Positions 15,186 through 57,635 of a stretch of 64,000 bases of DNA are shown here, piece by piece. The notes under the pieces are model-generated. The model searched no databases, was not told the DNA's origin, and saw only the letters and a list, made by a program, of their open reading frames with translations. Made by a program: the position numbers and the translations under genes. The stretch is from positions 248,001 through 312,000 of the forward strand of contig NW_013657649.1 in NCBI RefSeq assembly GCF_000142905.1. The letters are read 5' to 3'. Source of the DNA: Thecamonas trahens ATCC 50062 (Eukaryota > Protista > Apusomonadida). Position 1 is the stretch's first letter, and each line of letters begins with the position of its first letter.

Positions 15186-15351
15186 ATGATCAACAAAGCT
15201 GCTTCCCTTGCGCTACACCTTTCCCGTCCTCCTCCCTTCCCTCCCTCCCCCGGCCTCCTTCTCTGTTTCATTCATAAACTGTTCTTCCAACTAACTTCGT
15301 GCACTCTACAGTATCCACTTCTCTTGAAGCCCCCCCCCCCCTATACACACA

Positions 15352-15361
15352 TACACACATA

Positions 15362-15394
<33 letters not shown>

Positions 15395-15395
15395 G
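15352..15395. repeat. (AC)n microsatellite
   Basis: Imperfect ACAT/AC run upstream of the ATG at 15417. Confidence 0.85.
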
Positions 15396-15416
15396 CGCGC
15401 GCAAACGCCTCTCGCC

Positions 15417-18400
15417 ATGTATGCACCCGTGGCAATCCTCACACTTCTGGTCCTTGTCGCTCTCTCCCTGGCTGACGACTTGCCGTGTACGCTTGTGCCC
15501 GACGAAACCGCAACCGATGCAACCTCGCAGCTAGTGGGCTTGGCGACCAACATGCAGCACGCCTACCTTGCGGCGCTGGATGTGGACGAGGACAACGACA
15601 TCGATCTTATCTCGTCGGTTCCACCGCTCAAGTTGATGCGGAACCAGGGAGACAACACATTTGTAGAGGAGAACGCTGCCGCCGCCATGTCCTTCACCGA
15701 GCCGACTGGCTCCGGCATCACCATGGGCCTCGCCGTGGCCGACGCCAACGGTGACTCGCTTGATGACTTTGTCATCGGTTGGCGCGATCGAAACGTCCTT
15801 ATCATGTACTTTAACATCGGGGGCGGGTCATCGGCATTTACGCCTCACCAACTGGCGTCGGCAAGCCAGGTCGGATTCCCCGAGTTCATCGACTGGGACG
15901 GCGACGGCGATCTGGACCTGGTCAGCTTTCTCTGGTCTACCACCGGTCCTGCCCGGGTCTTTATCAACTCGGCCGGCTCATGGCCGACATCGCCGACGTA
16001 CTCGTTTGGCTCATTTACCGCAGTTCATCCGGGCTCTTACGGTGACTTTGATGGCGACAACGACCTGGACATGGTTGTTGGCAACCAAAAGTGGCGCCGC
16101 GACGGCCCGCTCTCTATGACCAACATCGGAACATTACCGGGTGGCCTGATCGGCACCTCATTCAGCTACCAGATCACCACGCCAATCAACTGGAACAGCG
16201 ACGGGCATGACGACGCAGGAGGCGGCAAGGGCTGTTACATTCTTCTTGGCGACGGTGCATTTGGCTTTACCTCGCAGACGCTTCCTATTCCCGACTGTAT
16301 TCCGACCCAAGAGCGAATTGTGGTCGACGTTAACAAGGACGGCGCCCATGACATGGTTTACTCGGCCTCAAACCGGCCCGACATCGGCATTTCGCTACTG
16401 GTCAACGATGGCAGTGGCAACTTTGCTTCCACGATCATCCGCAAGTCGGATCGCGCGGTCCATACGCCGTTTTTCGTCGACGTCGACGGAGATGGTGATT
16501 ATGATGTGTTCACTTCGCCGTGGGATAACTCTGACGTCGACTTTGGCAAGCTCTTCTTCCACGAGAACAGCGCACGTCCAGGCGCACACATGCCTGTCTT
16601 TCGCTCTCTCTGCGTCGTACCCGGGTGCACAACCGTTGATGGGTGCGTGAGCAATGTCATCAGGATTGCCCAGATCCACGGCGCTAGCGATGTCGAGCTC
16701 GCAGCAGGCGTCAACTACACCCAGTGTCCGGTCACGCCCATCACCATCACCAACTCGGCGCTTCGCATCCGGCCCAGAGGATGGTCGAGCCGGACGAGCA
16801 TCAGGTGTGGCCATGCCGGTGTTCTTTTCCGGGTTGAGCACGGTGCCAAAGCGGCTGTTGAGCGACTTGACATATTTGACACTTCGACTTCGTTTACGGT
16901 TGATCCGCAGCCGGCCATCCTGGTCACCGGCACCGCTTCCAAGCTGACACTCTCCAACGTGACCGTGACGAGCGCCGATGCGACCCGTGACGCCGCAGGC
17001 CTCACACTCATTGCATCCATTGTCGATGGCGGGTTTCTCGTGGCGGAAAACTCGGGGTCGCTCGTGGTGGAGAGCTCGGACTTTGTGGGGTGCTCGGCCT
17101 CGGGGTCGGGAGGAGCGATGGCGCTCAAAAAGACCGGCCTGGTGAGCGTGACCAAGACCTCATTTGTGGGCAACAGCGCAGTCGGAGGTGCTGGCGGCGC
17201 GGTGGTGGTTGTGCTCTCGGATGCGGTGATGGGTGATACGCCGCTCGTGTCTATCAGCAACTCGGTGTTTGCTCGCAACGAGGCGCGATACGGCGGCGTT
17301 GCGGCGGTCATCCTCGGACCGACCATTTTGCCGACTCTCGAGGACCACACCTTTCTCCCATGGCAGCCCAATCAAGCGGCAGCGCTTGCGAAGGCGTCCA
17401 ACCTCACGGTCTCGTTTGCCGACGTGATGTTGGCCGACAACGTCGCTAGCTTTGGCGACGTGCTCTATGATTGCTCAGCACCTGTGTCGCTTGGCCCGTT
17501 GGCTCAAGGCTCGGCCCAGGCACCCCGGGGGGGACCGTGCCTGGTGCGTCGTCGGTGTTTGTTTGCAACCCGAGCGACGCGGCGACGCAAGCGTATAGCT
17601 CGGTGCCGTGGGTCACGAGCGTCGGCCCCGAGGCAGGCGCGCTGGTGGCTGCGGCGGCGTCGCCGGCGGTCACCATCAAGCGGGTAGACGCTCCTGCAAA
17701 CGAGCCGGTCCTTGTGATGCCTGGCGAGGAGCTAGGTGGTGTCTCGTTTGGCGCCGATGATGTCTTTGGTTCGCCGACCACTGCGGGGCTGGTCGGCCTG
17801 CTCCCAGCACCTGGCTCGGGCGACGACGTGTTTATGTACGTATCTAATGTGCTCCGCGCGCTGTCGGCGAGCGAGACGGTGGTTGACTTTTCACGCGAGC
17901 GGCTGGCCGCTTCCCATGCAGGCGTTGTCGGCTCGACGGTATACATGAGTGCTGGTTTGGCTGTGGCTGGCGCTGAGGTCGTGTTCATCCCGCGGCCATC
18001 GCTGGTCGTTCAGTTCCCGCTGCAGTTTGTGGCGTGCGGGCCCGGATGGGGCGCGTCGTCGACGACGCCATTTGCTTGCAGCCCGTGCGCGTCCGGCCTC
18101 TTTGCGCCCGACACGTCGATGGAGGCTTGCAGGCCGCTCGACGACTGCCTGCCCAACTCGAAGCGGACACAGTCCGACTCATCAGAGTGCACGTGTAACG
18201 CCGGGTATTGGGCGCCGGCGCTAGCACCCGACACGCCGTGTGTAGTTTGCCCAGTCGGCGGGATTTGCGTCGGGTCGTCGACCGAGATACCAACTGCAGC
18301 GGTGGGTTACTTCAACGTGGCAAACTCGACAGGCTCGGGTGCGCTGGCGGAGATGGCCAAGTGCCCACGGCCGCAGTCGTGCGCCGGTGGCTCCAAGTGT

Positions 18401-19713
18401 GTCACAGGCTCAGAGGGCTTTATGTGCCGGGCGTGCTCAGACGGCTTTTACACCGACGAGGACACCGTGTGTCGAAAGTGCCCGAACGCGGCAGGAGCCA
18501 TGTTCTATGCCTTTGTCTCTGTCCTTGGCGCGGCGGTCGTTTTGGCAACGGCGGTAGTGATGTGGGCAGCGTACGGACGGGGCGGCGGGTCATCTTCGGT
18601 CTGGCGAGTGCCGCACGCAGTCAAGTCGGGCATTCTGTTCTTCCAGATCCTGGCGGTCATCGGCGGCGCCGAGCTCAACTGGCCGTCGCCGCTCAGCTAC
18701 ATCCTGGCGGTCTTCTCGGCGTTCAACCTCTCGCTCGCGCTGTTTGCCTCCGAGTGCGTACTGGTCGACTTTGCCACCATGTACAAGTTTACGGCGCTCA
18801 TTCCGATGGGTATGTTCTTGCTTGTCATGGCGGTGGCGGCGTTGTTCAAGTTTGGGCTTCGATTGCGGCGCGTGGCACTGCCGCGCGTGGCCGAGCGAGT
18901 GCTCTGCATCCTCGGCCCGATGCTTTATATTGCGGCAGCGCATGCATCACTCGTGCTCTTTGACTGCACCAAGTTGCCAAACGGCACTTTTGTGCTCGAC
19001 GCGGACATGGGCGTCGTGTGCTTCGAGTCGGAGTGGATCGAGCTGCTGCCGTATGGCCTCTTTGCGGTTGTCGTGTACGTCATTGGCCTGCCCGCAATCC
19101 TATTCACGCTCCTTTGCCGGGCACGACACTCGCTGCAGACATCCGAGGTGCGCTCCCGACTCGGAGTGCTCTTTCTCAACTTCCAGCCGCAGTTCTACCT
19201 CTTTGAGGTTCTGCTCCTCCTCAAGCGGCTCGCGGTAGTGGCGACGGCCATGTTTTTCTCAGACCTCCACGTCTGGCTCCTCACCATCTTTATGGTTGTT
19301 TTTGCAGTTTTTGCAGGCATCCAGCTCAAATACGAACCGTACAAACTGCAGATGTACAACGACATCGAGATGCAACTCAACCTCGTCATCTGCGCGCTGA
19401 TCATGCTCGGCACGCTCTTCTGGGCCGACAACTTTCCAAACCACACCTCGCTTGTCCTTTTTGCGGTCATCGGCTGCGCTGCAGTCTTCCTAGCCGTTCT
19501 CCTCCTCGTCCGGCTCTTTTCCGTGAGCTTGCGTTCCGGCTCGGCATGACCGCGCAAGTCGACGTCTGCAACGAGCCCGAGGCCAAGGAACACGGCTCAC
19601 CCTCGCTCGGCACCTCCGGCACAAGCTCCGGATCGGGCTTGGCACTGCTCACCCCGCAGCCGGTGGAGTTGAGCTATAGTTCTACCAGCTGCGCAAGCGA
19701 CTTGTCTCCATAG
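15417..19713 (+). CDS. Signal peptide + FG-GAP/VCBS repeats + right-handed beta-helix (PMP-like) + Cys-rich repeats + multipass membrane domain; frameshift at ~17527 and probably at ~19520
   Basis: Repeated 'D.D.DGD.D' motifs, 'F..NSA.GGAGGA', 'C..C..G.F' repeats and ~8-9 hydrophobic helices. ORFs 15186-17687 and 17471-19549 join at a C4G7 run. A plausible tail continues to TAG 19713 after a T4 run. Confidence 0.75.
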
Positions 19714-32269: not shown

Positions 32270-32684
32270 GGAACCGTGAAGTGGGTGGGGAGGGGAGGAG
32301 GGGGAGTGAGAGAAGGAGTGGCTCCACTCCCAGAGAACCTGCCTGCATACTCCTTGTCTGCCGCCGTCACCTCGTCGCCTCGCCTCTCCGTCGCCGGCTT
32401 CCGAACCACAACACGACAGAACAGGATAACATGACATGGTGTGGCATGACATGACCTGACATGCGCCACTGTCACGGCCACTGCCAAATACGGCTTGGCT
32501 TGGCTTGCCAGAGACAGCGGAGAGAATGCTATCACCACAAAAAAGTGCCATCCTTGCACGACGGGCTTCCCCCCCCTCCCCCCTCCCCCTCCCCCTACCC
32601 CCCTACCCCCGTCGACGCCAAGCACCACTCCACTCCACTCGTCCACTCGCTCTCACTCTCACCTCTACAAAGACGGGCGGGGAT

Positions 32685-35600
32685 ATGACTCAATCCAAAT
32701 ACGAGGAGCGCTGCTCTGTCAGGCAGACGCCTGTGTTTCTGGAGCATGTTCGAGACGGGGTCCGGTCACGCCTCCTCTCCGCCCTCACTATGACCATGCT
32801 GTTTGCGGTTGTCTCCTTCCTCATCTTTGGCGCCTTTTTCCGCAACCCGCTCCCGCTATACGGCCGTAACATTCCGGCGACGCTTGAGACGGTGCTTCTT
32901 CCAAGGCGTGAGCTGGAGGCTGCTGTGGTGGCCACCGGTGATGGATCGGCCGGAGCGAGGCCAAGCGAGCCCTTTGCCAAGTTTCGCATCGCCAACAAGC
33001 GCGGGTTCGGCGTCAAAGACGCGGTCATCACGGCATCGATTGCGTCGTTTAGTGTCCCTCCACTTGTGGCGGGGACAGTCCGATGCAATCCGCTGGCGGC
33101 CACGCTGCTGGTGCAGCAGTACGCGTATCTCTGTGATGCCCTGCTCGACGGCACCGCCACCACCGATGCCAACGGCGTGGCCGTCTTTGACGCCACCCGC
33201 TTTGCGCCCGGCACGCAGCCAGGCAAGTACAACGTGACCTTTGTCAGCGGGCCGTTCTCGACCTCGGTCGAAGTCACTGTCACCTCGCCGGTCGCTTATC
33301 TCGACTTTACTGTCCCGCCGCTCGCCTCGCTCAGCGACTTTACTGGCGTGTTTATCGGCGACTCGGCGTCGATTCCGTTCTATGTCACTCCGTACGACGC
33401 CGAGGGCAATCCGCTCGCCGGCCGCATTGTACGGCTTGTCTCGCGCTCGATCGACGGCTCGATTGTTATTCCCGTCGACGAGTACCACCCAACCCGTGCC
33501 GACAAGGTCGTCTACCTCCCGCTCCCGCAGTCGGACAAGGTTATTCTCCTCGAGAACAACGTGGCGACAACCAACGCCACCGGCGCCGCCGCCTTTGAAG
33601 CCCTCACCGTCGTGGCTGCCTCGCATCCGGTCGCCTATCTCACTTTTATCTGCGACGGCGCCGCCCTCGACCTCTTTGCCGACGCCTTCCGCCCGCCGAT
33701 TGTGTTCACCGACGCCGATGCCATCACCATTGTCGAGCAGCCGTCGGCAACCGTTGTTGAGGGCCAGCCACTGGCGGTCCAGCCGCGGCTGAGGGTGACC
33801 AACGCCGCCGGGGCCGGCCTCGCCGGACGAACAGCCTTTGCGCTCATCGCCCGCCGCGACGGCGTGCCCGAGCCCGAGTTTCTGCAGTACGTCAATCCGC
33901 TCGAAGACCGCAAGCAGCTGACCAACCCCATTTCGGGCAAGACTGACGCCGACGGCTTTGTCACCTTTGCCAATCTCGGCTTTGGCATCGACGGCCCCGC
34001 CGGCGTCTACACCCTCGTCTTTGTCGTCGACGGACTCGGCTCAGAAGTGAGCCAGGACATTACGGTGACGACGACTGTTGCCACAGTCTCGGTCTCATAC
34101 TTTCCGGTCCTCCCCATTTCAGTCCCGTACGAGGAGGTCAACTTTCCGGTTGTCGCCATCTCGGACGCCAATGGCCGGCCGGTTCCCGGCAAGACGCCCA
34201 AGCTCATCCCCAACCCGCGCGCACGCGGCCAGTCGCACGCTCAGCCTTCACTCGCCAACGGGCTCGCCTTCTTTGACCTGCTTACCGTCACCGCCGTCGA
34301 CTTTGACTCGACGTACGGCGTCGACCCCATTCCGTTCCCGCCGACCCATCTCACCTTTGTTGTCGACGTCGATGGCGTCCGCACCTCGCTCAACGTCTCC
34401 TTTGTCCCGGCGAGTGATCAGTACGTCGCGCCAGTGGCGACTTGGATCGAGACCGTCACCCCGCCGCCAGCGCTCATTCTTCCCACCGACGTCCTCAACG
34501 TCTCGCTCACGCTCCTCAATGCGTTCATGGATCCGATTCCGCTCACTCCGTCCATTCTCTTCTCCAACCCACTCATTCCCTCGGGCATCTTCTTCCAGAC
34601 CGCGGTCCGGCTCGTTAACTCGGCGACGTTTGTCAGCACATATGAGCTTATTCCCGCCACCGCCCAGGTCGACTACTACAACACAACGCTTGTGGACGAG
34701 CCGTGGCGCGCGACTGCCTTTCCATACCTCTTTGGTGTCAATGGGTACACTGGCTCGTTCACCTACCAGATCTCACTCGCGCCCGGCGGGAGTGCCAACG
34801 CCGGCCGGTCCTCGCCGGTTGCCTCGAACCTCTTCGAGGCTGTGCTTTACAACCCGATTTCGACCTATCTTTCTTCGGTCCAAGCCGATCTCTCGGTTAT
34901 CGTCCGCGACGACGCCAACGCACTCGTCCCCAACTCTTACGTCCAGCTCAACGTTCTGCCGTACACCTCGGTCGACGTCACCTTTCTCTCGCTCCTCGGT
35001 GAAGTGCCGCTGACGGGCGTGGTCTCATCGGCCGTCGCAGGCTTCACCAACGCCTCGGGCGTGTGCGCGTTTGGCGCGCCGACGTTTTTGCCCAACGTTG
35101 TCGGCCCGGTCGACGTCTTTTTCTACGCCGGCGGCAAGCTCCTCACCGGGCTGGTCAAGGTCAACGTTCCGCGGGTGGTAGCCAACATCACCATTGTCAC
35201 GCCAGCAGTGTACTTTGATGCCACGGCGCTCGACAGTGCCAACGCCGACGTCATGCCGTTCTTTGTTCCGTTTACCACCCAGCCGCAGGTCCGCCTCCTC
35301 GACGCTGCCGGTGACCCTGTGGTCGGCGCGCGCGCGCTCATTGCCGTCGCTCAGGATCCGACGACCTACAGCTACTTTGAACAGTCGGACGAGGCATTTG
35401 TCGGACGGGTGACCGTAGCGTCTGGAGAGGAAGCCAAGGTTGCCTCGATGTTTTCTCTGCCTTCCGACGCCACCGGCCTTGCTACTTTTGAAGACATCGG
35501 GGTGTGGTACGCGGTCGGCGCCGACGGCTCTCCGCTCAAAACGCCAGCGACGCTCCGTCTGCGGTACTTTTCCGACGGTGGCGCCGGCATCGATGGTGGG

Positions 35601-38600
35601 CCGATTCACGACGTGGGGACGCCCAACACGGTCCGAGTTCTCGATACTGTCACCATTGCCATTGTGCAGCAGCCGTCGTCGGTCGCCTCGCTTGGCGTTC
35701 CGTTTGCAAAGCCGATCACCCTCTCGCTCACCACGGCCTCGGGTGTGGTGCCGGATGTAACGTATGCCACGGTCTCGGTGGTGTCCGGCCCTGTAGTGAC
35801 CAACGCCGACGGCAGCAACACGTCGCTGGCGGCATCGGCGCGGATTTCCCAGTCGCTGTGGCCGTTCCAGGCTCGATCCAAGTTTGTGGTCGATACCAAG
35901 TTCGAGCGCGGCGCCGCCGGGCGGTACGAGCTCGCGGTCTCGTTCCCCGGTGCGCCATCGGTTGTGCTCGAGCCGATCGAGCTGACGTCGCGGGTCTCGT
36001 CGCTCCGGCTGGTGCGCCAACCGCCACTGGTTGTTCCAGTTGGCGGCCTCTTTCGCATCTCGGTGCGGGCGTCGATCAAGAGCGGCGCAGTGCTTGGCGG
36101 AGTGGTTGTCCAGGCGCGGCTCATCCGCGGAACTACGAGCGTGGCCAAGGCCATCCGGCTCGACCAGATCGGACGCAACCGACTCGACGCGTCGCGCGTT
36201 TCCAACGCCACCGATACCAACGGCATTGCCGACCTCTCGCTCACGGTCGAGTCTGCCGAGCCCGGTCTCTTTACCCTCGTCATCACCACCACCGACGGCC
36301 TCGTCGCCTCGCTGCCGTCGCGGCCGTTTCTTGTCACCAACAATGTCAAGAAAGTGACATTGCTCCAGCAGCCGACTGGCCTCGCCAAGCCGCTCATTCC
36401 GACGCGGACCCTCAACGGGCGGTCCGACACGGTTCTCATCACGTCCGAGGGTGACCAAGGCGTGTCGACAATGCAACAGCCGGTTGTTCGGGTGACTGGC
36501 GACCTCGGCGACGCCAAGAACGTCCCGCTCCCCGGCGTCGCCATCGAGGCCGTTGTCGTCCAGTCGTCGACCACAGACGGAAGTCTCTCCGGGACGACCA
36601 TCACCGCGCAGGATGTGTCGCGGCCGGAGCTGCTCTGGAGCCGCGGAACGGCGGTGAGCGACGCCAATGGCGTGGCGCGGTTCTCGGACCTGCGGTTCAC
36701 TTCGGGTGCAACCGGCGCGTACCGGCTCATTTTCCGCGGGCGCGGCATTGAGTCTGTGGCGTCGGCGCCGTTCCTGGTCACCAACGTCCTGGTTCCTGAC
36801 GCGGAGCGGCTCTCATCGTTCCGAGCATTTGTCTTTGTTGTCCTCATCCTCATGCTGCCGATGCTGTATGGCAACATCATGGGCAACTCGCGGTACGCCA
36901 TTGTGGGTGCGGTCATTCTCGGACTCGCCTTTCTGGCCTTCTCGTTGTTTTTCTGGCCAACGCGGTGGCGCCATCGTCGCCCAAGGACGCGTTCGAGGTC
37001 ACGCTCAACGTGGTGACGATTGTGGCGCTGCTCGCGGTGCTAGTCTGGTTCGTGGTGGTTCTCGTCGGCACCTTCCGTGGCGCGGCCACGTTTGTGGAAA
37101 AGCGCGAGGTTCTCGCCTTCGAGACCGTCAAGCGGCTGCTCTCGCCGACCCATGCGAATCAGTACTGGGAGGACAAGCTGCGGGAGGCTGCCGGGTCGCG
37201 GATTCGGCGGTGGCGGATTGCGCTCGCTGACAAGCTCCCGAGTGTGCTGGCCGACAAGATCGACCCCGGCCCGCTCGACGATGGAAGCGGCAACCCGTTT
37301 GAGCCGTTTGAGACCAAGGCTGACTTTGTCTACCCGCAGCGGCTCGTCATTGCCGCGTTTGTGGCGGGCTTTTTTGTGGCAATCATGACGCTCGGCGCGG
37401 TTGTCGCAGTCCTCTGGGTCCGGTACTACGCCGATCTTGCGTTCCAACAGCTGCTCAAGGTCGAGCTTCTCTTGGAGCGGCAGCAGCAGGCACTGCAGGC
37501 TACGGCTGCGGCGTCTGGGCTCGATACGTCTGCAGGCGATCTCAAGGTGGCGCTCTCGGCATCGTCGTCACTCTCGCACTACTTGGTGGGCCTAGTCTCG
37601 TCGCCGGTCTTCACCGAGCTCCGCAAAGCGCTTCTCGACGCCGGTGCGGTGGCGGTGGTAGGCACGCTCATCTTTGTGGGCGTCATGTGGTATCTGCTCC
37701 TTGTCAACTACCGCAAGAACGTGTTTCGGCTCCGGCGCGGGCTGGTGGACAAGGTATTGTACAAGCAGAGCAAGTACAAGGCGCTCCGCGCGCCGGCGTA
37801 CATCGGCATGCAGACGGTGCACACACTTGCCGGCTACGCGACAACCTTCCTCATTCTGTGGATTGTCTTTTCCTCGTCTTTTTCCGGCCAACACGGGCGT
37901 ACGGCGCGTCGCGGATCCTCCCGCTCGTGCTCTCGCTCCTCACGCTCAATCTGCTCATGAAGCTTGTGCAAAAGTTTATCATTGCCAGGTACGTGGTCTC
38001 GAGCGACCACCCGTTCCTCCTCCCGAACCCACGGTGGTGGTCGCTCTATGAGCTCGTCTATACCTTTCTCAACATTGTCAACGGCGTCTCGCTCACGATT
38101 GTGCGGTTCTCGGGCGCGCTCGGCGCGCTCGTCTTTACCTTTTTGCGAATGGACTACCCGGTGGTCAACAAGACCCGCGAGCACGCCGACCCAGGCTTCC
38201 ACGCCTACGTGGCGATGCTCCTCCTCGATCACGTCCACAACAACCCTGTGGTGGTCGTCGCCTCGCAGATCTTCATCCAGTCGCTGCTGTACGGGCGGGC
38301 GCGCGACGGCGCCGACATTGTACCGTACCGGCTGCGGATCGACGACCCGGACTCGGGCTTTCCGTCGCCTCCCAAGCCGCGGCTCTCGCCGACGGCGCGG
38401 CGAGCCCGGCTCCGGTGGGCACTCGCCGTCACCCTCATCAACAATCCGTCGTTGAGGGCAGAGCGCTGGTTTGCACTCGAGGCCGCCGCTGCCGCCCGCG
38501 CCGTCCTCCGCGCTCCAGGCCTGGTCGTCACCAGCCACACAACACTCGACGACGAGATGTTTGTGGGCGCGGTGGCTGCCGGCAACACCGATGGTCAGAG

Positions 38601-38796
38601 GGCAGCGCCGATCGGCGCCAGCAGGGTCGTCTCGACGGCGCCTGCACTCGACGGCGGCTCAAACTCGGCCGACGGCGTTGAGCTCGAGATGTTTCCGGGT
38701 GTGACGGCGGTGTCTGTTGCGCCTGCGCCTTCGCATCACCCCGCCCATGCGTTGTCCGAGAACTCGTCCTCCGAGCACTCGAGCACTCCAGAGTAA
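32685..38796 (+). CDS. Giant membrane protein: N-terminal TM, ~1300 aa of Ig-like (Big-1/invasin-like) repeats, C-terminal STRA6/RBP-receptor-like multipass domain; frameshifts at ~36950 and ~37870
   Basis: Repeats 'TDANGVA.F..L....G.Y.L.F' and 'IVQQP'. C-terminal 'FLNIVNG..R.D..DPGFHAYVAMLLLDHVHNNPV' and 'RARLRWALAVTLINNPSL' are STRA6-family motifs. Three ORFs join at T runs. Confidence 0.78.
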
Positions 38797-51397: not shown

Positions 51398-54029
51398 CTA
51401 CGCATCACGGGTGGACGCCCGCCGAGTCGAATTCCCCTTATTCTTGACCTTCTTCTTGGACTTGTTCTTCTTCCGCTTCCGCTTGCTCTTCTCCTTCTTG
51501 CTCTCCTTCTTGCTCGCCTTCTTGCTCGCCTTCTTGCTCTCCTTCTTGCGCTTGCTCACAACCTTGGCCGGCTTGTCCAGCTGGGCCAGATCGTACATCG
51601 AGACGAGGTGTGCCTCAACAAAGCGGCCGTCGCGCGACCAAGGCCCGCGCGAGTGGGCCTCGACCCGAAAGGCGTACGCGTTGTCGCGGACGCTGTCGGC
51701 AAAGTGGGCGAGCGCACTGGCAACATCGCTCTCGTCGTCGGCGGGTGGGAGCTGCGGGAGGTGGATGGAACGCGGCATAAAGGCGAGGGCGGCAGCAAGG
51801 AGCTTGACGTCAAAGCCGTCGCCATCGACAAGCTTGGCCTCGCTCGAGACGCGCGGCACGATCGCAACATCAATGAGTGCAGACCGGTTGAGGTCAACAA
51901 CAGTGAGCTCGACGTACGGCATGTGCGGCAAGTTCGGCGAGTTGACATGGACTGATGAGGCCTGGTGTGGCAGGCCGGCGTCAAACGCCTCGGCGTCGAG
52001 CACGATCTGGACGCCAACGCTCTCGGCGGCGGCATCGTCGTCGTCGTCGCTTGTGCCACGCCGCGACACCGACGCCGACGCCGACTTGCGCAATGTCTTG
52101 CGCCGCGACTTGGGCGCGGCGAGCTCGGCGAGCGACGGCATGTCAACCATGCTCGGGTTGCGAATCCGGATTCGCGCCACCCGGCCCTGTAGCACCACCG
52201 TAGTCCGCTCATGGACCGGCAGCGTCGGCAGGGCGCTGGAGACGAGTACCTGCAGCGGCACCGCCTGGGCCTCGGGCACCAGCCGCTGGAACATCGAGTA
52301 TGAGGGGAGATGCGGGACGACGGGATTGCAGCCGAGCGAGAGCTCGGCCATCATGTTGGCCCGCAACCCGCGCTCGAGCGCAAACAGCCTCGCCAGCCCT
52401 GGGTACCGCGAAATCGAGTACGGAATGGTCTGCGAGCCGATGCCGTCCGAGTAGTACTGCGAGAACGAGGTGCCGTACGGAACCAGCAGCCGCCCATCGT
52501 CCGACGACGGTATGACCGAGCTGACCACCACCGAGGTCGCCAGCAGCGCGTCACCCTGTGCGATGCTGTCAAACAGCTCCTCGGCGCCGGCGCGGTACAT
52601 CTTGAGCGTCACCAGCTGGGCCTCGCCCTCGGACAGTTCGACGTAGCGGAAGAGCGATCGCGACGGTGCCGACCCGTGGCGGGCAGCAGACCTGGGCGAC
52701 GACACGTAGACCACAATGCCGGCAATGTCGACCCGCACGCCGTCGGGCACGTGCAGCAGTGCACGGAGCGGGATGTAGTCCAGGACCGGCCGCGGGAGCG
52801 CAAGCGACGGTGCCGCACCCGGTGGAATCCGCCGCACAGACGCCGCTGGGTGGGTGATGTTGAGCGAGAGCTCCCACAGATCACGGTAGTTGTACGACTT
52901 TTTCGACCGGTACCCGGTGACCACCACAAGGTCGCCGACAGCAAGGTCGGCGTACAACTCACGGCACGCCTCCTGCCACACCACAGCCTCGATCCGATAC
53001 GTCAGGTCCTCAAGCACAAATGAGAACTTGAACGGGACCCGCGCCGACGAGCTCGGCCCACCGTAGTACTGAAGCACTTGCTTGCCTGTCACCTTGCCCA
53101 GCAGCGGAGAGCTGCCGACCTTGTTCGACTTGAAGCTGGTGACAGCCTCGGCGAGCGACGGCAGCGGCGTCGCCGCAATCTCGGCCTCGAACGCTGCCAC
53201 CTCGTCTGCGCTCATGTCCAGCGCCCCACTCGCCTGCCACTCTGGTCCAGGCGGGAGCGAGTGGTCGTCATCCAAGTTGAGATATGTGGAGCGGACCTGC
53301 GTCAGCGGAGCAAAGGCCTGCTCGGCCTCGCTCGCCTTGCTCGAGTACACCAGTGGCACGAGAGGATTCACCAAGATCTCGCCCACCGGCCACTCGTCCG
53401 ACAGCGGTGAGACCCGCAGGTTGAGTCCATGTAGAACGAGGAAGCCCGGGCCGCCGACCCTCGTCTCATCGTACCGCACCCGGAGCTCGGTGACCTCGAC
53501 AACGGCCCCGCGCACCAACTTGCCGCTCTCCACCAGCTTCCCAAGCACAGGTGCCAGCACCACCTTGGTCTGCACATCCAGCCCCCACCCCCCCACCTCC
53601 CGCATGCGTGAGTCTACCCGCATGCTCCCCCATCCCCCCCCCCCTTTCCAGCCGTCATGAAAGCGCGCCAGTTTTCGCGCCAGTTTTCAGCCCGCCCTCC
53701 CCCACCAACCCACCCACCCACCTCACGGTGCCCCCCTCCAAGCACCACCACCACCGTACCATATGTGATCCATCCGAGAGGACAATGTCGTATGCGTAAG
53801 GAGCGGCCGGAGGCATGACAGCGCCGACGACGGTGCCGTACTCTGCAGTGGGGGCGAACTTGTAGACGGCGGCCACCTGGACGACCACAGGGGCGGTATT
53901 GCTCTCATCATCAACCACAAGCGACCTTCCCGAGAGCAGCACCTTGTCCACCGCATCCTTACTCAGCACAGAAGCACTCTGCTCTGCCTGCACTGCTTTC
54001 GCACTTGCACGCCGCCGCTTCCCTGCCAT
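51398..54029 (-). CDS. RADX: RADX-like (RPA-related) multi-OB-fold ssDNA-binding protein; exons 54029-53760, 53569-51398
   Basis: A 190-nt GTACGG..GCAG intron joins 'YDIVLSDGSHM|TKVVLAPVLGKLV'. Further motifs: 'YDETRVG', 'LQYYG', 'VVWQEAC.ELY..L.VG.LVVV.GY..KKSY', 'ELSLN..HP', 'DIAGIVVYV'. Confidence 0.8.
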
Positions 54030-54737
54030 GCCAAGTCGGCCCGCACGAGAGGTGTGTGTGTCCGTACCCGTTCCCATGTCCGCAGCCTGGCCGTCGCCCG
54101 CCCGCCCGCCCGCCCGGCCCCCCACCCCTCCGCCCCTCCGCCNNNNNNNNNNNNNNNNNNNNNNNNNNNNNNNNNNNNNNNNNNNNNNNNNNNNNNNNNN
54201 NNNNNNNNNNNNNNNNNNNNNNNNNNNNNNNNNNNNNNNNNNNNNNNNNNNNNNNNNNNNNNNNNNNNNNNNNNNNNNNNNNNNNNNNNNNNNNNNNNNN
54301 NNNNNNNNNNNNNNNNNNNNNNNNNNNNNNNNNNNNNNNNNNNNNNNNNNNNNNNNNNNNNNNNNNNNNNNNNNNNNNNNNNNNNNNNNNNNNNNNNNNN
54401 NNNNNNNNNNNNNNNNNNNNNNNNNNNNNNNNNNNNNNNNNNNNNNNNNNNNNNNNNNNNNNNNNNNNNNNNNNNNNNNNNNNNNNNNNNNNNNNNNNNN
54501 NNNNNNNNNNNNNNNNNNNNNNNNNNNNNNNNNNNNNNNNNNNNNNNNNNNNNNNNNNNNNNNNNNNNNNNNNNNNNNNNNNNNNNNNNNNNNNNNNNNN
54601 NNNNNNNNNNNNNNNNNNNNNNNNNNNNNNNNNNNNNNNNNNNNNNNNNNNCGCCCCTCCGCCGCCCGCCACCCACCCGTCGCTCACTCACCCACAAACC
54701 ACGACCTTTTTTCGGACCTCTCCCCCACCGCCACCTG

Positions 54738-54839
54738 CCTCACCCACACCAACACCCACACCCACACCCACACCCACACCCACACCCACACCCACACCCA
54801 CACCCACACCCACACCCACACCCACACCCACACCCACAC
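54738..54839. repeat. (CACACC)n hexamer microsatellite upstream of the UBE2T ATG
   Basis: About 16 tandem copies. Confidence 0.92.
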
Positions 54840-54847
54840 TCGTCACA

Positions 54848-55615
54848 ATGGCTGCAGCCGAGACAAGACTGGTGCGACGACTTGCGCGAGAGCTGCAGCT
54901 GATGCAGGACGACCCGCCGTATGGAGTTGGAGCGTGGCTTGTGCGCGAGGGCGCTCTGCGCGAGTGGGAGGGCGTTCTGGACGGGCCGGAGGAGACGCCA
55001 TACGCGGGCGGCGCCTTCAAGGTCGCCATCACTGTGCCGGACGGCTACCCGCTCACACCGCCGGTTGTCCGCTTTGTCACCCCAGTCTACCACCCGAACA
55101 TCGACTCGGCCGGGCGTATCTGCCTCGACACGCTCAAGATGCCGCCCAAGGGCGCCTGGCTTCCCTCGCTCAACATCCCCACCCTCCTCACCATGATCCG
55201 CCAGCTGCTCGCCCAGCCGAACCCGGACGACGGCCTCATGGTCGACATCACCGCACAGTACACCGACTCCCGCCCGGCCTTTGACGCTGCAGCCCGCGCC
55301 CACACCCTCAAGCACGCTCTGCCCGATCCGGCTCCGGCTCCGACTCTACCGGCCGCGTCCCCGCCTCCGTCGACTCCTGCCGCCAAAGCACCTCCTCCTG
55401 CCACGTCCTCGCCTCCACCCGCTCCTGCCCCGGTGGCACCGATCGCGCGCCCGTCCGCGAGCCCCTCCGTCACCACCGTCGTCAGCATGCTTGCCCCTGT
55501 CGGCGGCGCGTCGTCAGGCGACTCTTCCATCGACTCGTCCGCCGACTCGGACGATGATGACGCCTGCTCCAACGAGCCGCCAGCCAAGCGGCACAAGCCG
55601 CTATCGAGCACATGA
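54848..55615 (+). CDS. UBE2T: Ubiquitin-conjugating enzyme E2 T (Fanconi pathway)
   Basis: 'YHPNIDSAGRICLDTLKMPPKGAWLPSLNI..L..PNPDD.LM.DI' includes the PPKGAW insertion typical of UBE2T; C-terminal disordered tail with 'PPAKRHK'. Confidence 0.9.
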   Translation: MAAAETRLVRRLARELQLMQDDPPYGVGAWLVREGALREWEGVLDGPEETPYAGGAFKVAITVPDGYPLTPPVVRFVTPVYHPNIDSAGRICLDTLKMPPKGAWLPSLNIPTLLTMIRQLLAQPNPDDGLMVDITAQYTDSRPAFDAAARAHTLKHALPDPAPAPTLPAASPPPSTPAAKAPPPATSSPPPAPAPVAPIARPSASPSVTTVVSMLAPVGGASSGDSSIDSSADSDDDDACSNEPPAKRHKPLSST

Positions 55616-55893
55616 ACTGTGCCTCCCCTCGCCCTCACCCTCACCCATCGCCCCATCGCCCCATCGCCCCATCGCCCCGTTGCCCCAACACGCCACTACC
55701 TCGCCAGTAGCCAGTTCCAATTACCCACCCACAGACTGCAGGTCACATTTAGCTCCCTCGCCCTCGCCTACGCCCACGCCCACGCCCACGCCCACGCCCA
55801 CCTACACACCACTCGCCCCAATACCCTCGCCCACTCACACACATACATACATCCACATACATACATCTACCCCTCCATCCTGCCCCTTACCCA

Positions 55894-57635
55894 ATGGTAC
55901 GCACACACACACACACGCACCACCCTCCCCCCCCCCCCCCNNNNNNNNNNNNNNNNNNNNNNNNNNNNNNNNNNNNNNNNNNNNNNNNNNNNNNNNNNNN
56001 NNNNNNNNNNNNNNNNNNNNNNNNNNNNNNNNNNNNNNNNCCACCCACCCACCCACCCACCCCGCTCCTACCCAAACTCACCCCCACCCCCCACCCCCGC
56101 TCCCCAAGGCCAACCCGCCACCGCGCTCGGTGTCCATGACCTTTGGCGAGGTAAAGGTGCCAGACACCTCCCGCCCCCGCGTCCCGCAGCGGTCAAGCAC
56201 CTCAGGCTCGCTCCTTACCCGCCTGTTTGCCAAGGCCAAGTCAACCTTCCACTCGCCGCCGGCAGGTGACGTCGGCTCGGACGACGAGCCGGCATCGCTC
56301 ACATCGGCCTCGCCGCCTCTTGCTGCCTCGGCCTTGGCCTCGGCCTCGGTTCCAGTGCTGGAGTCAGACTCGCTGGCGGTCCTCCCCAGCGCACCGCCGC
56401 TTGCCGGGCGGAGCAAGGCACGCGAGTCCAAGTTTAGCGGGCTCGACGAGGCCGATCAGGTGGCGGACGAGTTTCTGCGGACGACGTGCTGGTCGGGCAT
56501 TCCGCCGTCGGCCCGCCCGCTCTGCTGGCGCATGCTCCTGGGCGTGGCGCCGCTCAAGGCCTCGCGCCGCGCCGGCGTCCTCGCCCGCAAGCACGCCGAG
56601 TACGCGGCGATGGCGAGCGGGATGGCGAGCGAGGCCGACGAGTTGGCGTCCAAGTATGAGCGCGGCTTGCTGAACCAGATCCACATTGACGTCCTTCGCA
56701 TGGCGCCGTTCATGCCGCTGCTTGTCGCGCCGCAGGTCCAGGCCGCGCTCCAGCGGCTGCTCTTTCTCTGGTCGCTCCGCCACCCTGGCTCTGGCTATGT
56801 GCAGGGCATCAACGACCTCGCCCTCCCATTCTTCATTGTCTTTCTCCGCGGCGCCCTCTTGCCCGAGGCCTTTGACGCCCTTGGTGCGTGGTTGCCGACC
56901 CGGGTCGAAGCCGGTGACTTTACCGCCGCCGCCGCCCTCGCCGACCTCCCGCCTGTGCTCGCCGCACAGGGCGAGCCCGCCCTCGACGCGACTGACGCGC
57001 AGGGCGAGGCTTCGGAGCACGACACGCTGATGTTTGCAGTGGCGGCAGCGTCGCCCGAGGCGCAAGCTTTCGCGGCGCTCCTTCCTGACGACGCCTCGCT
57101 CCTGAGCGCCGAGGCCGACACTTACTGGTGCCTCACTGCACTCCTCGATTCAATCCATGACAACTACATCCAGAACCAGCCGGGCATTCAGCGGATGCTC
57201 AAGCAGCTCGAGCTCCTGGTTGGGCTGATGGCGCCGGACCTGGCAAGTCTCCTCGCCGAGTACTCGATCGAGTACATCCAGTTTGCCTTCCGCTGGATGA
57301 ACTGCCTGCTTATGCGCGAGCTCTCGGCCCACCTTGTGGCGCGGCTCTTCGACACCTACCTCGCCGAGGGCGCCTTTGCCAAGTTCCATGTCTTTGTCTG
57401 CGCCGCGCTCCTCGTCTCGTTTAAGGCCGACTTGATGGCGCTCGCCACGCTTCTCCGCGAGCAGCCCGGCGCCGATCCGGACGGCGCCCACCACGACGTC
57501 TTCCAGGCCCTGCTCTCGTTCTTGCAAGACTTGCCCACCGCAAAGTGGACCGAGGAGAACGTCGAGGTCCTCCTCGCCGAGGCCTACGTTGCCCGCGAGC
57601 TCTACCTCGAAGTTCTCGACCGCGACGTCCGCTAG
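55894..57635 (+). CDS. TBC-domain Rab GAP (Gyp1/TBC1D22-like); probable exons 55894-55896 (ATG) and 56109-57635
   Basis: 'WSGIP..RP.CW..LLG', R-finger 'QIHIDVLR', Q-finger 'SGYVQGINDL..PF', 'EADTYWCL..LLD.I.DNY..QPGIQ', 'QFAFRWMNCLLMRE'. ATG|GTACGC..AAG intron spans a gap; alternative ATG at 56136. Confidence 0.9.

What the first reader, a model, noticed from the sequence alone, without database searches (positions are those of the whole stretch)
32685..38796. STRA6-like transporter fused to a ~1300-aa invasin/Big-1-like Ig ectodomain
Seen in sequence: bridging two frameshifts gives one ~2000-aa protein. Its C-terminal membrane domain has STRA6-family motifs ('DPGFHAYVAMLLLDHVHNNP' at ~38188; 'RARLRWALAVTLINNPSL' at ~38401). 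It is preceded by many 'TDANG.A.F..L' repeats. Known: vertebrate STRA6 is the retinol-binding-protein receptor, its cytosolic C-terminal helices bind calmodulin, and it has no large ectodomain. Inference: a protist lipid or retinoid uptake or adhesion receptor that carries its own capture arm, possibly Ca2+/calmodulin regulated. The ORF track splits it in three, so automated annotation would easily miss it.
Basis: partly seen in the sequence, partly recalled or inferred. Interest (0 to 1): 0.8.

Follow-up and report, generated by a model that had tools for sequence, protein, structure and literature searches.

The report
Giant STRA6-like receptor with Ig-domain arm
A free-living protist (Thecamonas trahens) has one ~2,040-residue gene that joins a long stalk of about ten bacterial-adhesin-like Ig domains to a membrane domain of the vertebrate vitamin-A receptor (STRA6) family. 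The same design occurs in distant protists, so this "animal" receptor family is older than assumed and once carried its own outside arm.

Summary
Window 32685-38796 (+) is one gene, NCBI AMSG_07193 of Thecamonas trahens.

- **Frame breaks:** the two breaks are single missing bases in T-runs. An uninterrupted ortholog (P0009) aligns colinearly through both. The annotation bridges them with two false introns that delete membrane segments.
- **Membrane domain:** the C-terminal part is a real STRA6-family member. It scores Pfam RBP_receptor 71.7 bits (E 7e-20) and matches zebrafish STRA6 (5SY1), including the main calmodulin-binding helix BP2. A relative with the same architecture folds onto 5SY1 at Z 19.9.
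- **Ectodomain:** about 1,320 residues form some ten β-sandwich repeats. The best structural matches are intimin/FdeC Big_1 domains and macroglobulin MG domains.
- **Distribution:** a search of 1.84 billion proteins found nine more proteins with the homologous arm plus a STRA6-like domain. They include Anaeramoeba flamelloides and Ancoracysta twista. The Ancoracysta protein also carries a class-3 lipase head.

Its claim that annotation would miss the gene does not.

The proposed function is capture of hydrophobic cargo handed to a STRA6-type membrane cleft under Ca2+/calmodulin control. This is inferred, not shown. I class it as a new variant of a known kind.

The parts
32685..38796 (+). Whole gene (about 2,038 codons when read through two single-base breaks). 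The start is either the ATG at 32685 or the annotated ATG at 32790. The stop codon is 38794-38796.
32772..32852 (+). N-terminal hydrophobic segment (signal anchor or signal peptide) that would place the repeat array outside the cell
   Evidence: Hydropathy peak at residues 30-56. Full-length relatives P0011, P0110, P0113 and P0130 have a similar segment near residues 70-90.
32883..34406 (+). Ectodomain repeats 1-4 (32883-33284, 33300-33692, 33678-34070, 34071-34406), Ig-like β-sandwich units ending in the TDANG.A.F motif
   Evidence: Sub-threshold Pfam hits to Big_3_5 and Big_1.
34407..34727 (+). Divergent spacer of about 107 residues without the motif. It may be a tenth, degenerate β-sandwich domain.
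   Evidence: Gap between repeat-HMM matches. Not modelled.
34728..36782 (+). Ectodomain repeats 5-9 (34728-35168, 35184-35603, 35613-35942, 35958-36338, 36381-36782)
   Evidence: The AF2 model is all-β with blocks at pLDDT 80-95. VIA-align gives intimin 1F00 Z 10.1 (rmsd 2.5 Å, 92 residues) on repeat 8 (35958-36338), FdeC Z 9.8, and C3/A2ML1 MG domains Z about 9. Sub-threshold Pfam hits to CarboxypepD_reg (2.5e-4) and bMG3 (1.5e-3).
36825..36953 (+). TM1 and TM2 of the STRA6-like membrane domain, still in the frame of ORF1
   Evidence: Hydropathy, two helices in the AF2 model, and alignment to P0009 residues 745-795.
36948..36952 (+). Frame break 1: a T5 run with one base missing relative to the reading frame
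   Evidence: The P0009 alignment switches frame at 36950-36953 with no residue lost (795/795).
36912..36985 (+). False 74-nt 'intron' of the annotated model AMSG_07193. It is coding sequence and removes TM2.
36953..37870 (+). Middle piece of the membrane domain (TM3-TM6 and loops), in the frame of ORF2
   Evidence: P0009 residues 795-1139 align here at 33% identity. Paralog L001 aligns to its end.
37850..37885 (+). Frame break 2: one base missing, in the T4 run 37868-37871 or the T5 run 37879-37883
   Evidence: P0009 residues 1139/1141 flank the switch. The paralog alignment runs straight through it. Homopolymer runs were located.
37865..37962 (+). False 98-nt 'intron' of the annotated model. 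It is coding sequence and removes a TM segment.
   Evidence: The Pfam match itself starts at 37915, inside this 'intron'.
37915..38466 (+). Pfam RBP_receptor (STRA6) match, profile positions 425-603 of 605
   Evidence: E 7.1e-20, 71.7 bits against a cut-off of 25. Same place found. phmmer to 5sy1_A residues 457-626, E 1.9e-8.
38386..38466 (+). BP2-type calmodulin-binding helix (RAR.RW.L..TL.NNPSL), predicted cytosolic
   Evidence: Matches the 29-residue STRA6 peptide crystallised with calmodulin (5k8q_B, E 0.014). The motif is invariant in all four Thecamonas paralogs. BP2 is the main calmodulin determinant in zebrafish and sheep STRA6 (PMC12714816).
38467..38793 (+). C-terminal low-complexity tail
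   Evidence: No family match.

Best explanation
SHOWN. This is one gene of Thecamonas trahens (AMSG_07193). The protein has, in order, a short N-terminal tail, one hydrophobic anchor, about 1,320 residues of roughly ten Big_1/MG-type Ig-like β-sandwich domains, and a complete STRA6-family membrane domain. That domain has about nine TM helices plus an intramembrane helix and ends in the conserved BP2 calmodulin-binding helix. The two frame breaks are single missing bases in T-runs. They are most likely homopolymer undercalls in the assembly. The architecture is conserved in at least nine other proteins, from distant protists and from metagenomes, so it is an old family and not a local accident. 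INFERRED. The STRA6 topology (N-terminus outside, C-terminus inside) together with the N-terminal anchor places the Ig array outside the cell, directly above TM1. In vertebrate STRA6, a lipophilic cleft receives retinol from the soluble carrier RBP and releases it into the bilayer. I propose that here the built-in arm takes the carrier's place. It would bind a particle, prey surface or lipid carrier and present hydrophobic cargo (lipid, carotenoid or retinoid) to the STRA6-type cleft, with Ca2+/calmodulin on BP2 tuning the transfer. In the Ancoracysta ortholog the arm also carries a class-3 lipase with an intact GHSLG serine motif, which would release such cargo on site.
For: Single gene: P0009 aligns colinearly over all three frames with no residue lost at either break, and paralog L001 runs through break 2. 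Relatives are single ORFs of 5.8-6.2 kb on metagenome contigs, and one is a single transcript in Ancoracysta. STRA6 membership: Pfam 71.7 bits, a 5sy1_A match at E 1.9e-8 and a BP2 peptide match. The AF2 model of fused relative P0139 matches only 5sy1_A (Foldseek E 2e-8, next hit 0.37; VIA Z 19.9, 438 residues, next hit 8.7). Ig arm: the AF2 model is all-β and matches intimin, FdeC and MG domains. Big_1 and MG4 score over the Pfam cut-off in the homologous arms of P0112, P0011 and P0123. Family: the ectodomain is homologous to P0009 (E 2e-100), P0011 (2e-44), P0110 (4e-32), P0113 (3e-22) and P0140 (2.5e-13). All ten fused proteins fall in one clade supported at 98, and their monophyly is not rejected (p-AU 0.48). 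Lipid link: Lipase_3 at E 1.3e-20 in P0112. Retinoid context: the genome has two microbial-rhodopsin genes and one RPE65-type carotenoid oxygenase, and I found no lycopene cyclase. Homopolymer origin of the breaks. Many notes elsewhere in this genome report same-direction, one-base-missing breaks (these are leads only).
Against: No experiment or expression data exist for this gene. The frameshifts could be real, which would make this copy a recent pseudogene. The window's own ectodomain reaches no Pfam threshold (best hits are 21.8 bits for CarboxypepD_reg, 18.9 for bMG3 and 14.4 for Big_1). The STRA6 fold was tested on a relative (P0139), not on the window's joined protein. Calmodulin binding rests on motif conservation only, because the complex predictor was unavailable. 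The lipase head is absent from Thecamonas. Three short paralogs could equally serve retinoid or lipid uptake, so the rhodopsin context is not specific to this gene. Ig arrays of this kind usually serve adhesion, which needs no transport role.
Confidence: 0.5

Rival explanations
1. The protein is an adhesion, gliding or prey-recognition receptor. The Ig array is the working part, binding substrate or bacteria as intimin, invasin and FdeC do. The STRA6-like domain serves only as a multi-pass anchor or as a Ca2+/calmodulin-coupled signalling module, with no cargo transfer.
For: The best structural matches of the repeats are bacterial adhesins (intimin Z 10.1, FdeC Z 9.8). Thecamonas is a gliding bacterivore (general knowledge). 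The arm carries no recognisable ligand-transfer or enzyme domain in Thecamonas.
Against: The arm is always coupled to this one membrane family across very distant lineages. A simple anchor would not need to keep the most conserved STRA6 motifs. The Ancoracysta ortholog adds a lipase, which points to lipid handling.
Confidence: 0.22
2. The two frameshifts are real in strain ATCC 50062. This copy would then be a very recent pseudogene, or it would encode only a secreted or anchored Ig array truncated after TM2.
For: Real slippage mutations also favour homopolymers. No reads or cDNA could be examined here. Three short paralogs remain in the genome.
Against: There is no in-frame stop and no other lesion in about 2,040 codons. 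Both breaks have the same one-base-missing type at T-runs. The same pattern is reported in many otherwise intact genes of this assembly (leads, only partly checked). Conservation against the P0009 ortholog is equally good in all three pieces (41%, 33% and 43% identity).
Confidence: 0.2
3. The annotated model is right: two short GT-AG introns (36912-36985 and 37865-37962) are spliced out, giving the 1,944-aa protein.
For: Both intervals begin with GT, end with AG and have lengths of 3n+2. This is how the NCBI model bridges the frames.
Against: Both 'introns' translate into hydrophobic segments that align residue for residue with P0009 and with paralog L001. The Pfam match begins inside the second one. 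Removing them deletes two TM segments and would invert the topology.
Confidence: 0.03
4. The breaks are bridged by programmed -1 ribosomal frameshifting or by RNA-level base insertion.
For: Both shifts go in the same direction at U-rich runs. Other readers raised 'insertional recoding' for this genome.
Against: The orthologs need no recoding. The sites lie inside TM helices. The first site is not a canonical X XXY YYZ heptamer. I looked for no stimulatory structure and know of none.
Confidence: 0.02

Closest known systems
Vertebrate STRA6 (zebrafish structure 5SY1, with calmodulin) and STRA6-like/RBPR2
   Same: It belongs to the same Pfam family (PF14752). The last about 180 residues of the membrane domain show direct sequence similarity, including the FDPG-type loop, the intramembrane-helix region and the BP2 helix. 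A relative with the same architecture has the same overall fold (Z 19.9). The topology is compatible (N-terminus outside, C-terminus inside).
   Different: It carries an N-terminal anchor plus about 1,320 extracellular residues of Ig-like domains, where STRA6 has only a short N-terminus. It falls in a protist-type clade separate from the animal sequences. The N-terminal half of the membrane domain is too divergent for the Pfam profile. Its ligand cannot be vertebrate RBP4 (general knowledge: RBP4 is a vertebrate protein), and retinol transport is untested.
Intimin / invasin / FdeC bacterial adhesins (Big_1 domain arrays)
   Same: It has tandem β-sandwich domains of the same fold (1F00 Z 10.1, rmsd 2.5 Å; 4E9L Z 9.8 over 287 residues) with the same TDANG-type F-G hairpin motif. 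These form a rod-like extracellular array.
   Different: It is eukaryotic and has no β-barrel or LysM anchor and no C-type-lectin tip. The window's repeats do not reach the Big_1 Pfam cut-off. It is anchored by a STRA6-type multi-pass domain.
α2-macroglobulin / complement C3-C5 / CD109 (MG domain arrays)
   Same: The repeats superpose on MG domains (Z about 9). Pfam MG4 scores over its cut-off in the homologous arms of P0011 and P0123, and bMG3 is sub-threshold in the window.
   Different: It has no thioester domain, no CGEQ motif and no bait region or CUB domain. Only 4 cysteines occur in 1,319 residues.
NCBI model AMSG_07193 (uncharacterized protein, Thecamonas trahens ATCC 50062)
   Same: It is the same locus, already modelled as a single protein with PF14752 recorded.
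   Different: The model starts at 32790 and splices out 74 and 98 nt that are really coding. It therefore lacks about 57 residues, including two TM segments. It has no functional name, and the ectodomain is unrecognised.

Membership tests
STRA6 / RBP_receptor (PF14752) | Profile match above Pfam's gathering score | tested here: met
   71.7 bits against a cut-off of 25, E 7.1e-20, profile positions 425-603 of 605. The same place was found by the genome scan.
STRA6 / RBP_receptor (PF14752) | Direct similarity to an experimentally solved STRA6 | tested here: met
   phmmer against 5sy1_A residues 457-626, E 1.9e-8.
STRA6 / RBP_receptor (PF14752) | About nine TM helices plus an intramembrane helix, N-terminus outside and C-terminus inside | tested here: inconclusive
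   A simple hydropathy scan of the X-bridged read-through gives 8 clear TM peaks after the ectodomain; the amphipathic stretch I read as the intramembrane helix does not register as a peak. The count is consistent, but no dedicated topology predictor was run.
STRA6 / RBP_receptor (PF14752) | STRA6 fold over the whole membrane domain, including the N-terminal helix bundle | tested here: met
   Tested by proxy. The AF2 model of fused relative P0139 matches 5sy1_A (Z 19.9, rmsd 4.8 Å, 438 residues, chain 63-574; next hit Z 8.7). The window's pieces align colinearly with the family.
STRA6 / RBP_receptor (PF14752) | BP2 calmodulin-binding helix | tested here: met
   The sequence motif is conserved (5k8q_B E 0.014; invariant R, W, L, T, L, N, P, L columns). 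Compare the BP2 peptides in PMC12714816.
STRA6 / RBP_receptor (PF14752) | Actual Ca2+/calmodulin binding | not testable with these tools
STRA6 / RBP_receptor (PF14752) | Binds holo-RBP and transfers retinol | not testable with these tools
   This needs biochemistry. The Pfam match does not cover the extracellular loop that binds RBP in vertebrates.
Big_1 (PF02369) invasin/intimin-type Ig-like domain | Profile match above the gathering score | tested here: not met
   The window's best score is 14.4 bits against a cut-off of 34.9. The homologous arms score 40.1 bits (P0112, met) and 34.4 bits (P0011, just under).
Big_1 (PF02369) invasin/intimin-type Ig-like domain | β-sandwich that superposes on a solved Big_1 domain | tested here: met
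   1F00 intimin D1: Z 10.1, rmsd 2.5 Å, 92 residues. 6TPL: Z 9.6. 4E9L FdeC: Z 9.8.
Intimin/invasin adhesin family (whole-protein architecture) | Outer-membrane β-barrel anchor and lectin-like tip | tested here: not met
   No such Pfam matches were found. The anchor is a STRA6-type helical domain.
α2-macroglobulin / complement thioester proteins | Thioester domain with a CGEQ motif | tested here: not met
   No CGEQ motif. No helical TED was seen in the modelled part, ORF1 residues 682-1423, or in the Pfam scans of the whole arm. Only the MG-like domains resemble this family.

The most novel reading that the evidence does not exclude
The STRA6 family did not arise 'from scratch' in animals. It would descend from an ancient, pan-eukaryotic class of giant surface receptors in which a Big_1/MG-type arm, sometimes tipped with a lipase, captures prey-derived or particulate hydrophobic cargo. 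The arm then feeds that cargo (lipids, carotenoids, retinoids) into a calmodulin-gated membrane cleft. Animals would later have lost the arm and outsourced capture to the soluble carrier RBP. In rhodopsin-bearing heterotrophs such as Thecamonas, this could be the route by which chromophore precursors enter the cell.
Probability: 0.25. Interest if true: 0.85.

Novelty: new variant of a known kind. Interest (0 to 1): 0.68.

Why it matters
STRA6 is the only structurally known receptor that takes a lipid from a soluble carrier and releases it into the bilayer. Reviews describe it as made "from scratch" (PMC3546623) or as "animal-specific" (PMC5977736). This work shows three things:
- The family has about 1,500 cluster representatives, including Amoebozoa, choanoflagellates, an apusomonad, Anaeramoeba and Ancoracysta.
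- One conserved branch carries its own ~1,300-residue Ig arm, and in one ortholog the arm also carries a lipase.
- The calmodulin-binding BP2 helix is the most conserved motif across all of these proteins.

Together these give a testable picture of the ancestral role of the family, namely capture-coupled uptake of hydrophobic cargo. They also offer tractable non-animal models for the STRA6 mechanism and its Ca2+/calmodulin control. On the practical side, the public gene model AMSG_07193 lacks two membrane segments and should be corrected.

Tried and rejected
**Word-index protein searches.** These returned only the Thecamonas proteins themselves, so they said nothing about relatives. Queries were ORF1, P0001 residues 1380-1800 and paralog L001. 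The exhaustive HMMER search was needed.

**Profile of the nine repeats against PDB sequences.** Only weak β-sandwich hits came back (best E 0.034). This was not informative alone.

**ESM-Atlas feature search.** It pointed to Big_1, Invasin_D3 and Ig_SMCHD1 clusters at scores of 0.84-0.88, below the 0.9 level. I used it as a lead only.

The calmodulin C-lobe against BP2 test was therefore not run, and no verdict exists.
- The 'atlas' fold library was unavailable.
- An 86-sequence alignment failed. A 50-sequence alignment was used instead.

**Ig part of the P0139 model.** It came out at low confidence (pLDDT 30-44). The packing of the last Ig domain on the membrane domain could not be read.

**Joined sequences.** I did not submit any joined or frame-corrected protein to a search or fold tool. 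The pieces were used by reference. An X-bridged string was used only inside a local hydropathy script. The calmodulin exons were not joined either.

**Readings considered and rejected.**
- Separate genes: no stop or start signal separates TM2 from TM3, and the ortholog is colinear.
- Real introns: the "introns" are conserved coding sequence.
- A thioester α2M-like protein: there is no TED domain and no CGEQ motif.

**Domain tree.** The 210-column tree cannot prove a single origin of the fusion. It only fails to reject one (p-AU 0.48).

**Paralog L001 as a second broken-gene example.** The check was inconclusive. Homolog P0005 aligns to two frames, but with a 125-residue gap.
Full report
**Identity of the locus.** The window is G000:C31:248001-312000 of Thecamonas trahens ATCC 50062. 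The word-index search returned the locus's own NCBI product, "uncharacterized protein AMSG_07193", which is 1,944 aa with PF14752 precomputed. No contig handled here was human.

**The observation.**
- Three + strand ORFs in three different frames cover 32505-38796.
- Their translations show a hydrophobic N-terminus and a long region with recurring TDANG.A.F motifs.
- They also show a run of hydrophobic helices that begins inside ORF1 and continues through ORF2 and ORF3.

**The breaks are single missing bases, not introns or gene borders.**
- Frames step 0 to 2 to 1, which means one base is missing each time.
- An uninterrupted ortholog, P0009 (1,400 aa, from a Logan assembly), was found by the exhaustive search. 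It aligns colinearly in tblastn:
  - residues 653-795 to 36522-36953 (ORF1 frame)
  - residues 795-1139 to 36950-37849 (ORF2 frame)
  - residues 1141-1379 to 37852-38568 (ORF3 frame)
- No ortholog residue is lost at either junction.
- The first switch falls inside the T5 run at 36948-36952. The second falls within 37850-37885, which holds T4 (37868-71) and T5 (37879-83) runs.
- The 6.1-kb gene has only seven runs of 5 or more bases.
- The in-genome paralog L001 also aligns straight through the second break.
- The NCBI model bridges the frames with GT-AG "introns" of 74 nt (36912-36985) and 98 nt (37865-37962). Both are conserved coding sequence, and the Pfam match starts inside the second one. 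The public protein therefore lacks about 57 residues, including two TM segments.
- I cannot decide here whether the missing bases are assembly errors or real mutations. I favour error at about 70%. Nothing else in about 2,040 codons is damaged, and identity to P0009 is equally good in all three pieces. Many notes across this genome also describe same-direction, one-base-missing breaks in otherwise intact genes (leads, not verified by me).
An X-bridged string was used only in a local hydropathy script.

**The membrane domain belongs to the STRA6 family.**
- ORF3 matches Pfam RBP_receptor at 71.7 bits against a cut-off of 25 (E 7.1e-20, profile positions 425-603 of 605).
- phmmer against PDB sequences finds zebrafish STRA6 5sy1_A residues 457-626 (E 1.9e-8).
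- It also finds, separately, the 29-residue STRA6 peptide crystallised with calmodulin (5k8q_B, E 0.014).
- That peptide is BP2, the main calmodulin determinant of STRA6 with Kd below 1 nM (PMC12714816).
- The window's version keeps the R-A-R-x-R-W-x-L-x-x-T-L-x-N-N-P-S-L pattern. This pattern is invariant in all four Thecamonas paralogs and nearly so across 50 family members.
- Hydropathy of the read-through gives 8 clear TM peaks after the ectodomain; I read the amphipathic stretch that follows as the intramembrane helix, though it does not register as a peak.
- To test the fold of the whole domain I modelled P0139, a 901-aa relative with the same architecture, using a 50-sequence alignment. 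The model has pTM 0.60, and pLDDT in the membrane part is mostly 55-94, with one loop (residues 455-514) below 50.
- Its only significant PDB match is 5sy1_A (Foldseek E 2e-8, next hit 0.37).
- VIA-align gives Z 19.9, rmsd 4.8 Å and 438 residues aligned over chain 63-574, against Z 8.7 for the next entry.
- The N-terminal helix bundle, which Pfam does not detect in these proteins, is therefore STRA6-like as well.

**The ectodomain is an array of Big_1/MG-type Ig-like domains.**
- Nine repeats of 110-135 residues align with each other. A tenth, divergent unit probably sits at 34407-34727.
- On its own the window reaches only sub-threshold Pfam scores: CarboxypepD_reg 2.5e-4, bMG3 1.5e-3, Big_1 0.04 and Big_3_5 0.14.
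- An AF2 model of 34728-36953, built on 10 sequences, is all-β followed by two TM helices. Its mean pLDDT is 67, with blocks at 80-95.
- Foldseek returns only multi-Ig arrays, including E. coli α2-macroglobulin, C5, CD109 and titin.
- VIA-align ranks intimin 1F00 first (Z 10.1, rmsd 2.5 Å, 92 residues, on the repeat at 35958-36338). FdeC (Z 9.8 over 287 residues), intimin D00-D1 and C3/A2ML1 MG domains (Z about 9) follow.
- In homologous arms of relatives, Pfam thresholds are met: Big_1 at 40.1 bits in P0112, and MG4 at 27.5 and 26.5 bits in P0011 and P0123.
- There is no thioester motif. Only 4 cysteines and 9 N-glycosylation sequons occur in 1,319 residues.

**The fusion is a conserved family.**
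- A profile of the C-terminal domain of the four Thecamonas paralogs was searched against 1.84 billion representatives. It found 1,505 proteins at E of 1e-3 or better.
- Among the best 150, nine besides the query carry N-terminal regions homologous to the window's ectodomain:

| Protein | Evidence of homology to the window's arm |
|---|---|
| P0009 | E 2e-100 |
| P0011 | E 2e-44 |
| P0110 | E 4e-32 |
| P0113 | E 3e-22 |
| P0140 | E 2.5e-13 |
| P0139 | E 4e-7 |
| P0123, P0112, P0130 | matched by the repeat HMM |

- All nine have PF14752 at the C-terminus.
- Named sources are Anaeramoeba flamelloides (KAJ3425534.1) and an Ancoracysta twista transcript. The rest come from metagenomes.
- On contigs with eukaryote-type neighbours, the genes are single uninterrupted ORFs of 5.8 and 6.2 kb.
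- In a tree of the membrane domain, all ten fused proteins lie in one clade supported at 98, made up of protist-type sequences. This clade is separate from the animal and choanoflagellate group. Holding the ten together costs 0.9 log-likelihood units (p-AU 0.48), so a single origin is not rejected, although it is not proven.
- Short members occur in Cavostelium (Amoebozoa), Salpingoeca, cnidarians, molluscs and fish.
- Within Thecamonas there are three short paralogs of 509-705 aa. Only this gene has the arm.

**A functional clue.** The Ancoracysta protein P0112 has a class-3 lipase domain in front of its Big_1 repeats and STRA6-like domain. The match is Pfam E 1.3e-20, over the cut-off, and the GHSLG serine motif is intact.

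**Proposed mechanism (inferred).**
- The STRA6 topology, with an added N-terminal anchor, puts the Ig array outside the cell, tethered directly to TM1.
- Vertebrate STRA6 accepts retinol from RBP into a lipophilic cleft that opens to the bilayer, with calmodulin bound underneath. This is established knowledge (structure 5SY1; the primary paper was not held in the library).
- I propose that in this family the built-in arm replaces the soluble carrier. It would capture a particle, prey surface or lipid carrier, and in Ancoracysta hydrolyse it. Hydrophobic products would then enter the cleft, tuned by Ca2+/calmodulin.
- A retinoid or carotenoid cargo is plausible but not specific to this gene. 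The genome encodes two microbial rhodopsins and one RPE65-family oxygenase. No lycopene cyclase was found, although three SQS_PSY-family genes are present.
- The main functional rival is a pure adhesion or signalling receptor.

**Literature.**
- No paper in the searchable library combines STRA6 with Thecamonas.
- The combined search of STRA6 with five protist group names and 'premetazoan' (Dictyostelium, Capsaspora, Amoebozoa, Monosiga) listed no STRA6-containing paper among its top 12 results; it required only two of six terms, so absence is not shown.
- The one paper combining STRA6 with "choanoflagellate" concerns sponge gametogenesis and does not discuss protist STRA6 homologs.
- PF14752 appears in one unrelated paper.
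- Reviews call STRA6 made "from scratch" (PMC3546623) and "animal-specific" (PMC5977736).
- The library is incomplete, so prior description elsewhere cannot be excluded.

**Not available.** Complex prediction and the atlas fold library could not be used. Calmodulin binding therefore rests on motif conservation alone.

Noticed in passing
G000:C31:100239-100973 (L001), C52:73486-73809 (L003/L004), C70:66740-66826 (L005): There are three further STRA6-family genes in the same genome, each without an Ig arm. L005:127-1749 is an intact 540-aa ORF and L003:1186-2931(-) is 581 aa. L001 corresponds to AMSG_07129 (509 aa). Other first readers flagged two of them.
   Followed up: partly
L001:2952-3500(-) and L001:1444-3000(-): Paralog AMSG_07129 also seems split into two frames. 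Its nearest homolog P0005 aligns to both ORFs (residues 13-165 and 290-702), so the annotated 509-aa model is probably N-terminally truncated. C4 and A4 runs lie in the overlap.
   Followed up: partly
G000:C11:8724-9374 (L021), C51:111714-112379 (L022), C15:136793-138232 (L023): This heterotrophic flagellate has two Bac_rhodopsin-family genes and one RPE65-family carotenoid oxygenase (362 bits). One of the rhodopsin genes lies inside a 1,080-aa open frame. I found no lycopene cyclase of either type, so retinal may come from dietary carotenoid.
   Followed up: partly
L007:1492-1674(-) (G000:C35): This is the last exon of the canonical calmodulin gene (EF-hands 3-4). The gene is split by introns, so no single-reference full calmodulin was available.
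   Followed up: partly
window 17471-17687; 55281-55284; 57545-57635: Other same-strand ORF chains in the window step down one frame in the same direction as this gene (15186..17687 to 17471..19549; 53899..55284 to 55281..57635 to 57545..58876). The first overlap holds a G7 run. The other two overlaps hold no run of 4 or more bases, so they may be introns.
   Followed up: no
P0112 (Ancoracysta twista EP00164, transcript GFYU01003274): This protein has the order Lipase_3 head, Big_1/MG repeats, STRA6-like domain. No N-terminal hydrophobic segment was found, so the transcript may be 5'-incomplete.
   Followed up: partly
P0120 (EukProt, 1,550 aa); P0057 (Logan, 1,547 aa): P0120 combines a protein kinase, thioredoxin, cytochrome b561 and RBP_receptor in one model. 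This could be a merged gene model or a real fusion. P0057 shows three stretches of RBP_receptor at 232 bits, possibly a tandem duplication.
   Followed up: no
G000:C2:182029-182244 (L024): The only other Big_1-like signal in the genome is 29.5 bits, below the cut-off, inside a 979-aa open frame. It is not related to the STRA6-like genes as far as I checked.
   Followed up: no
window 35025-36476(-), 35606-36916(-): Long antisense ORFs of 436-483 aa lie opposite the ectodomain coding region. They are typical of this 63-66% GC sequence and are not genes.
   Followed up: no
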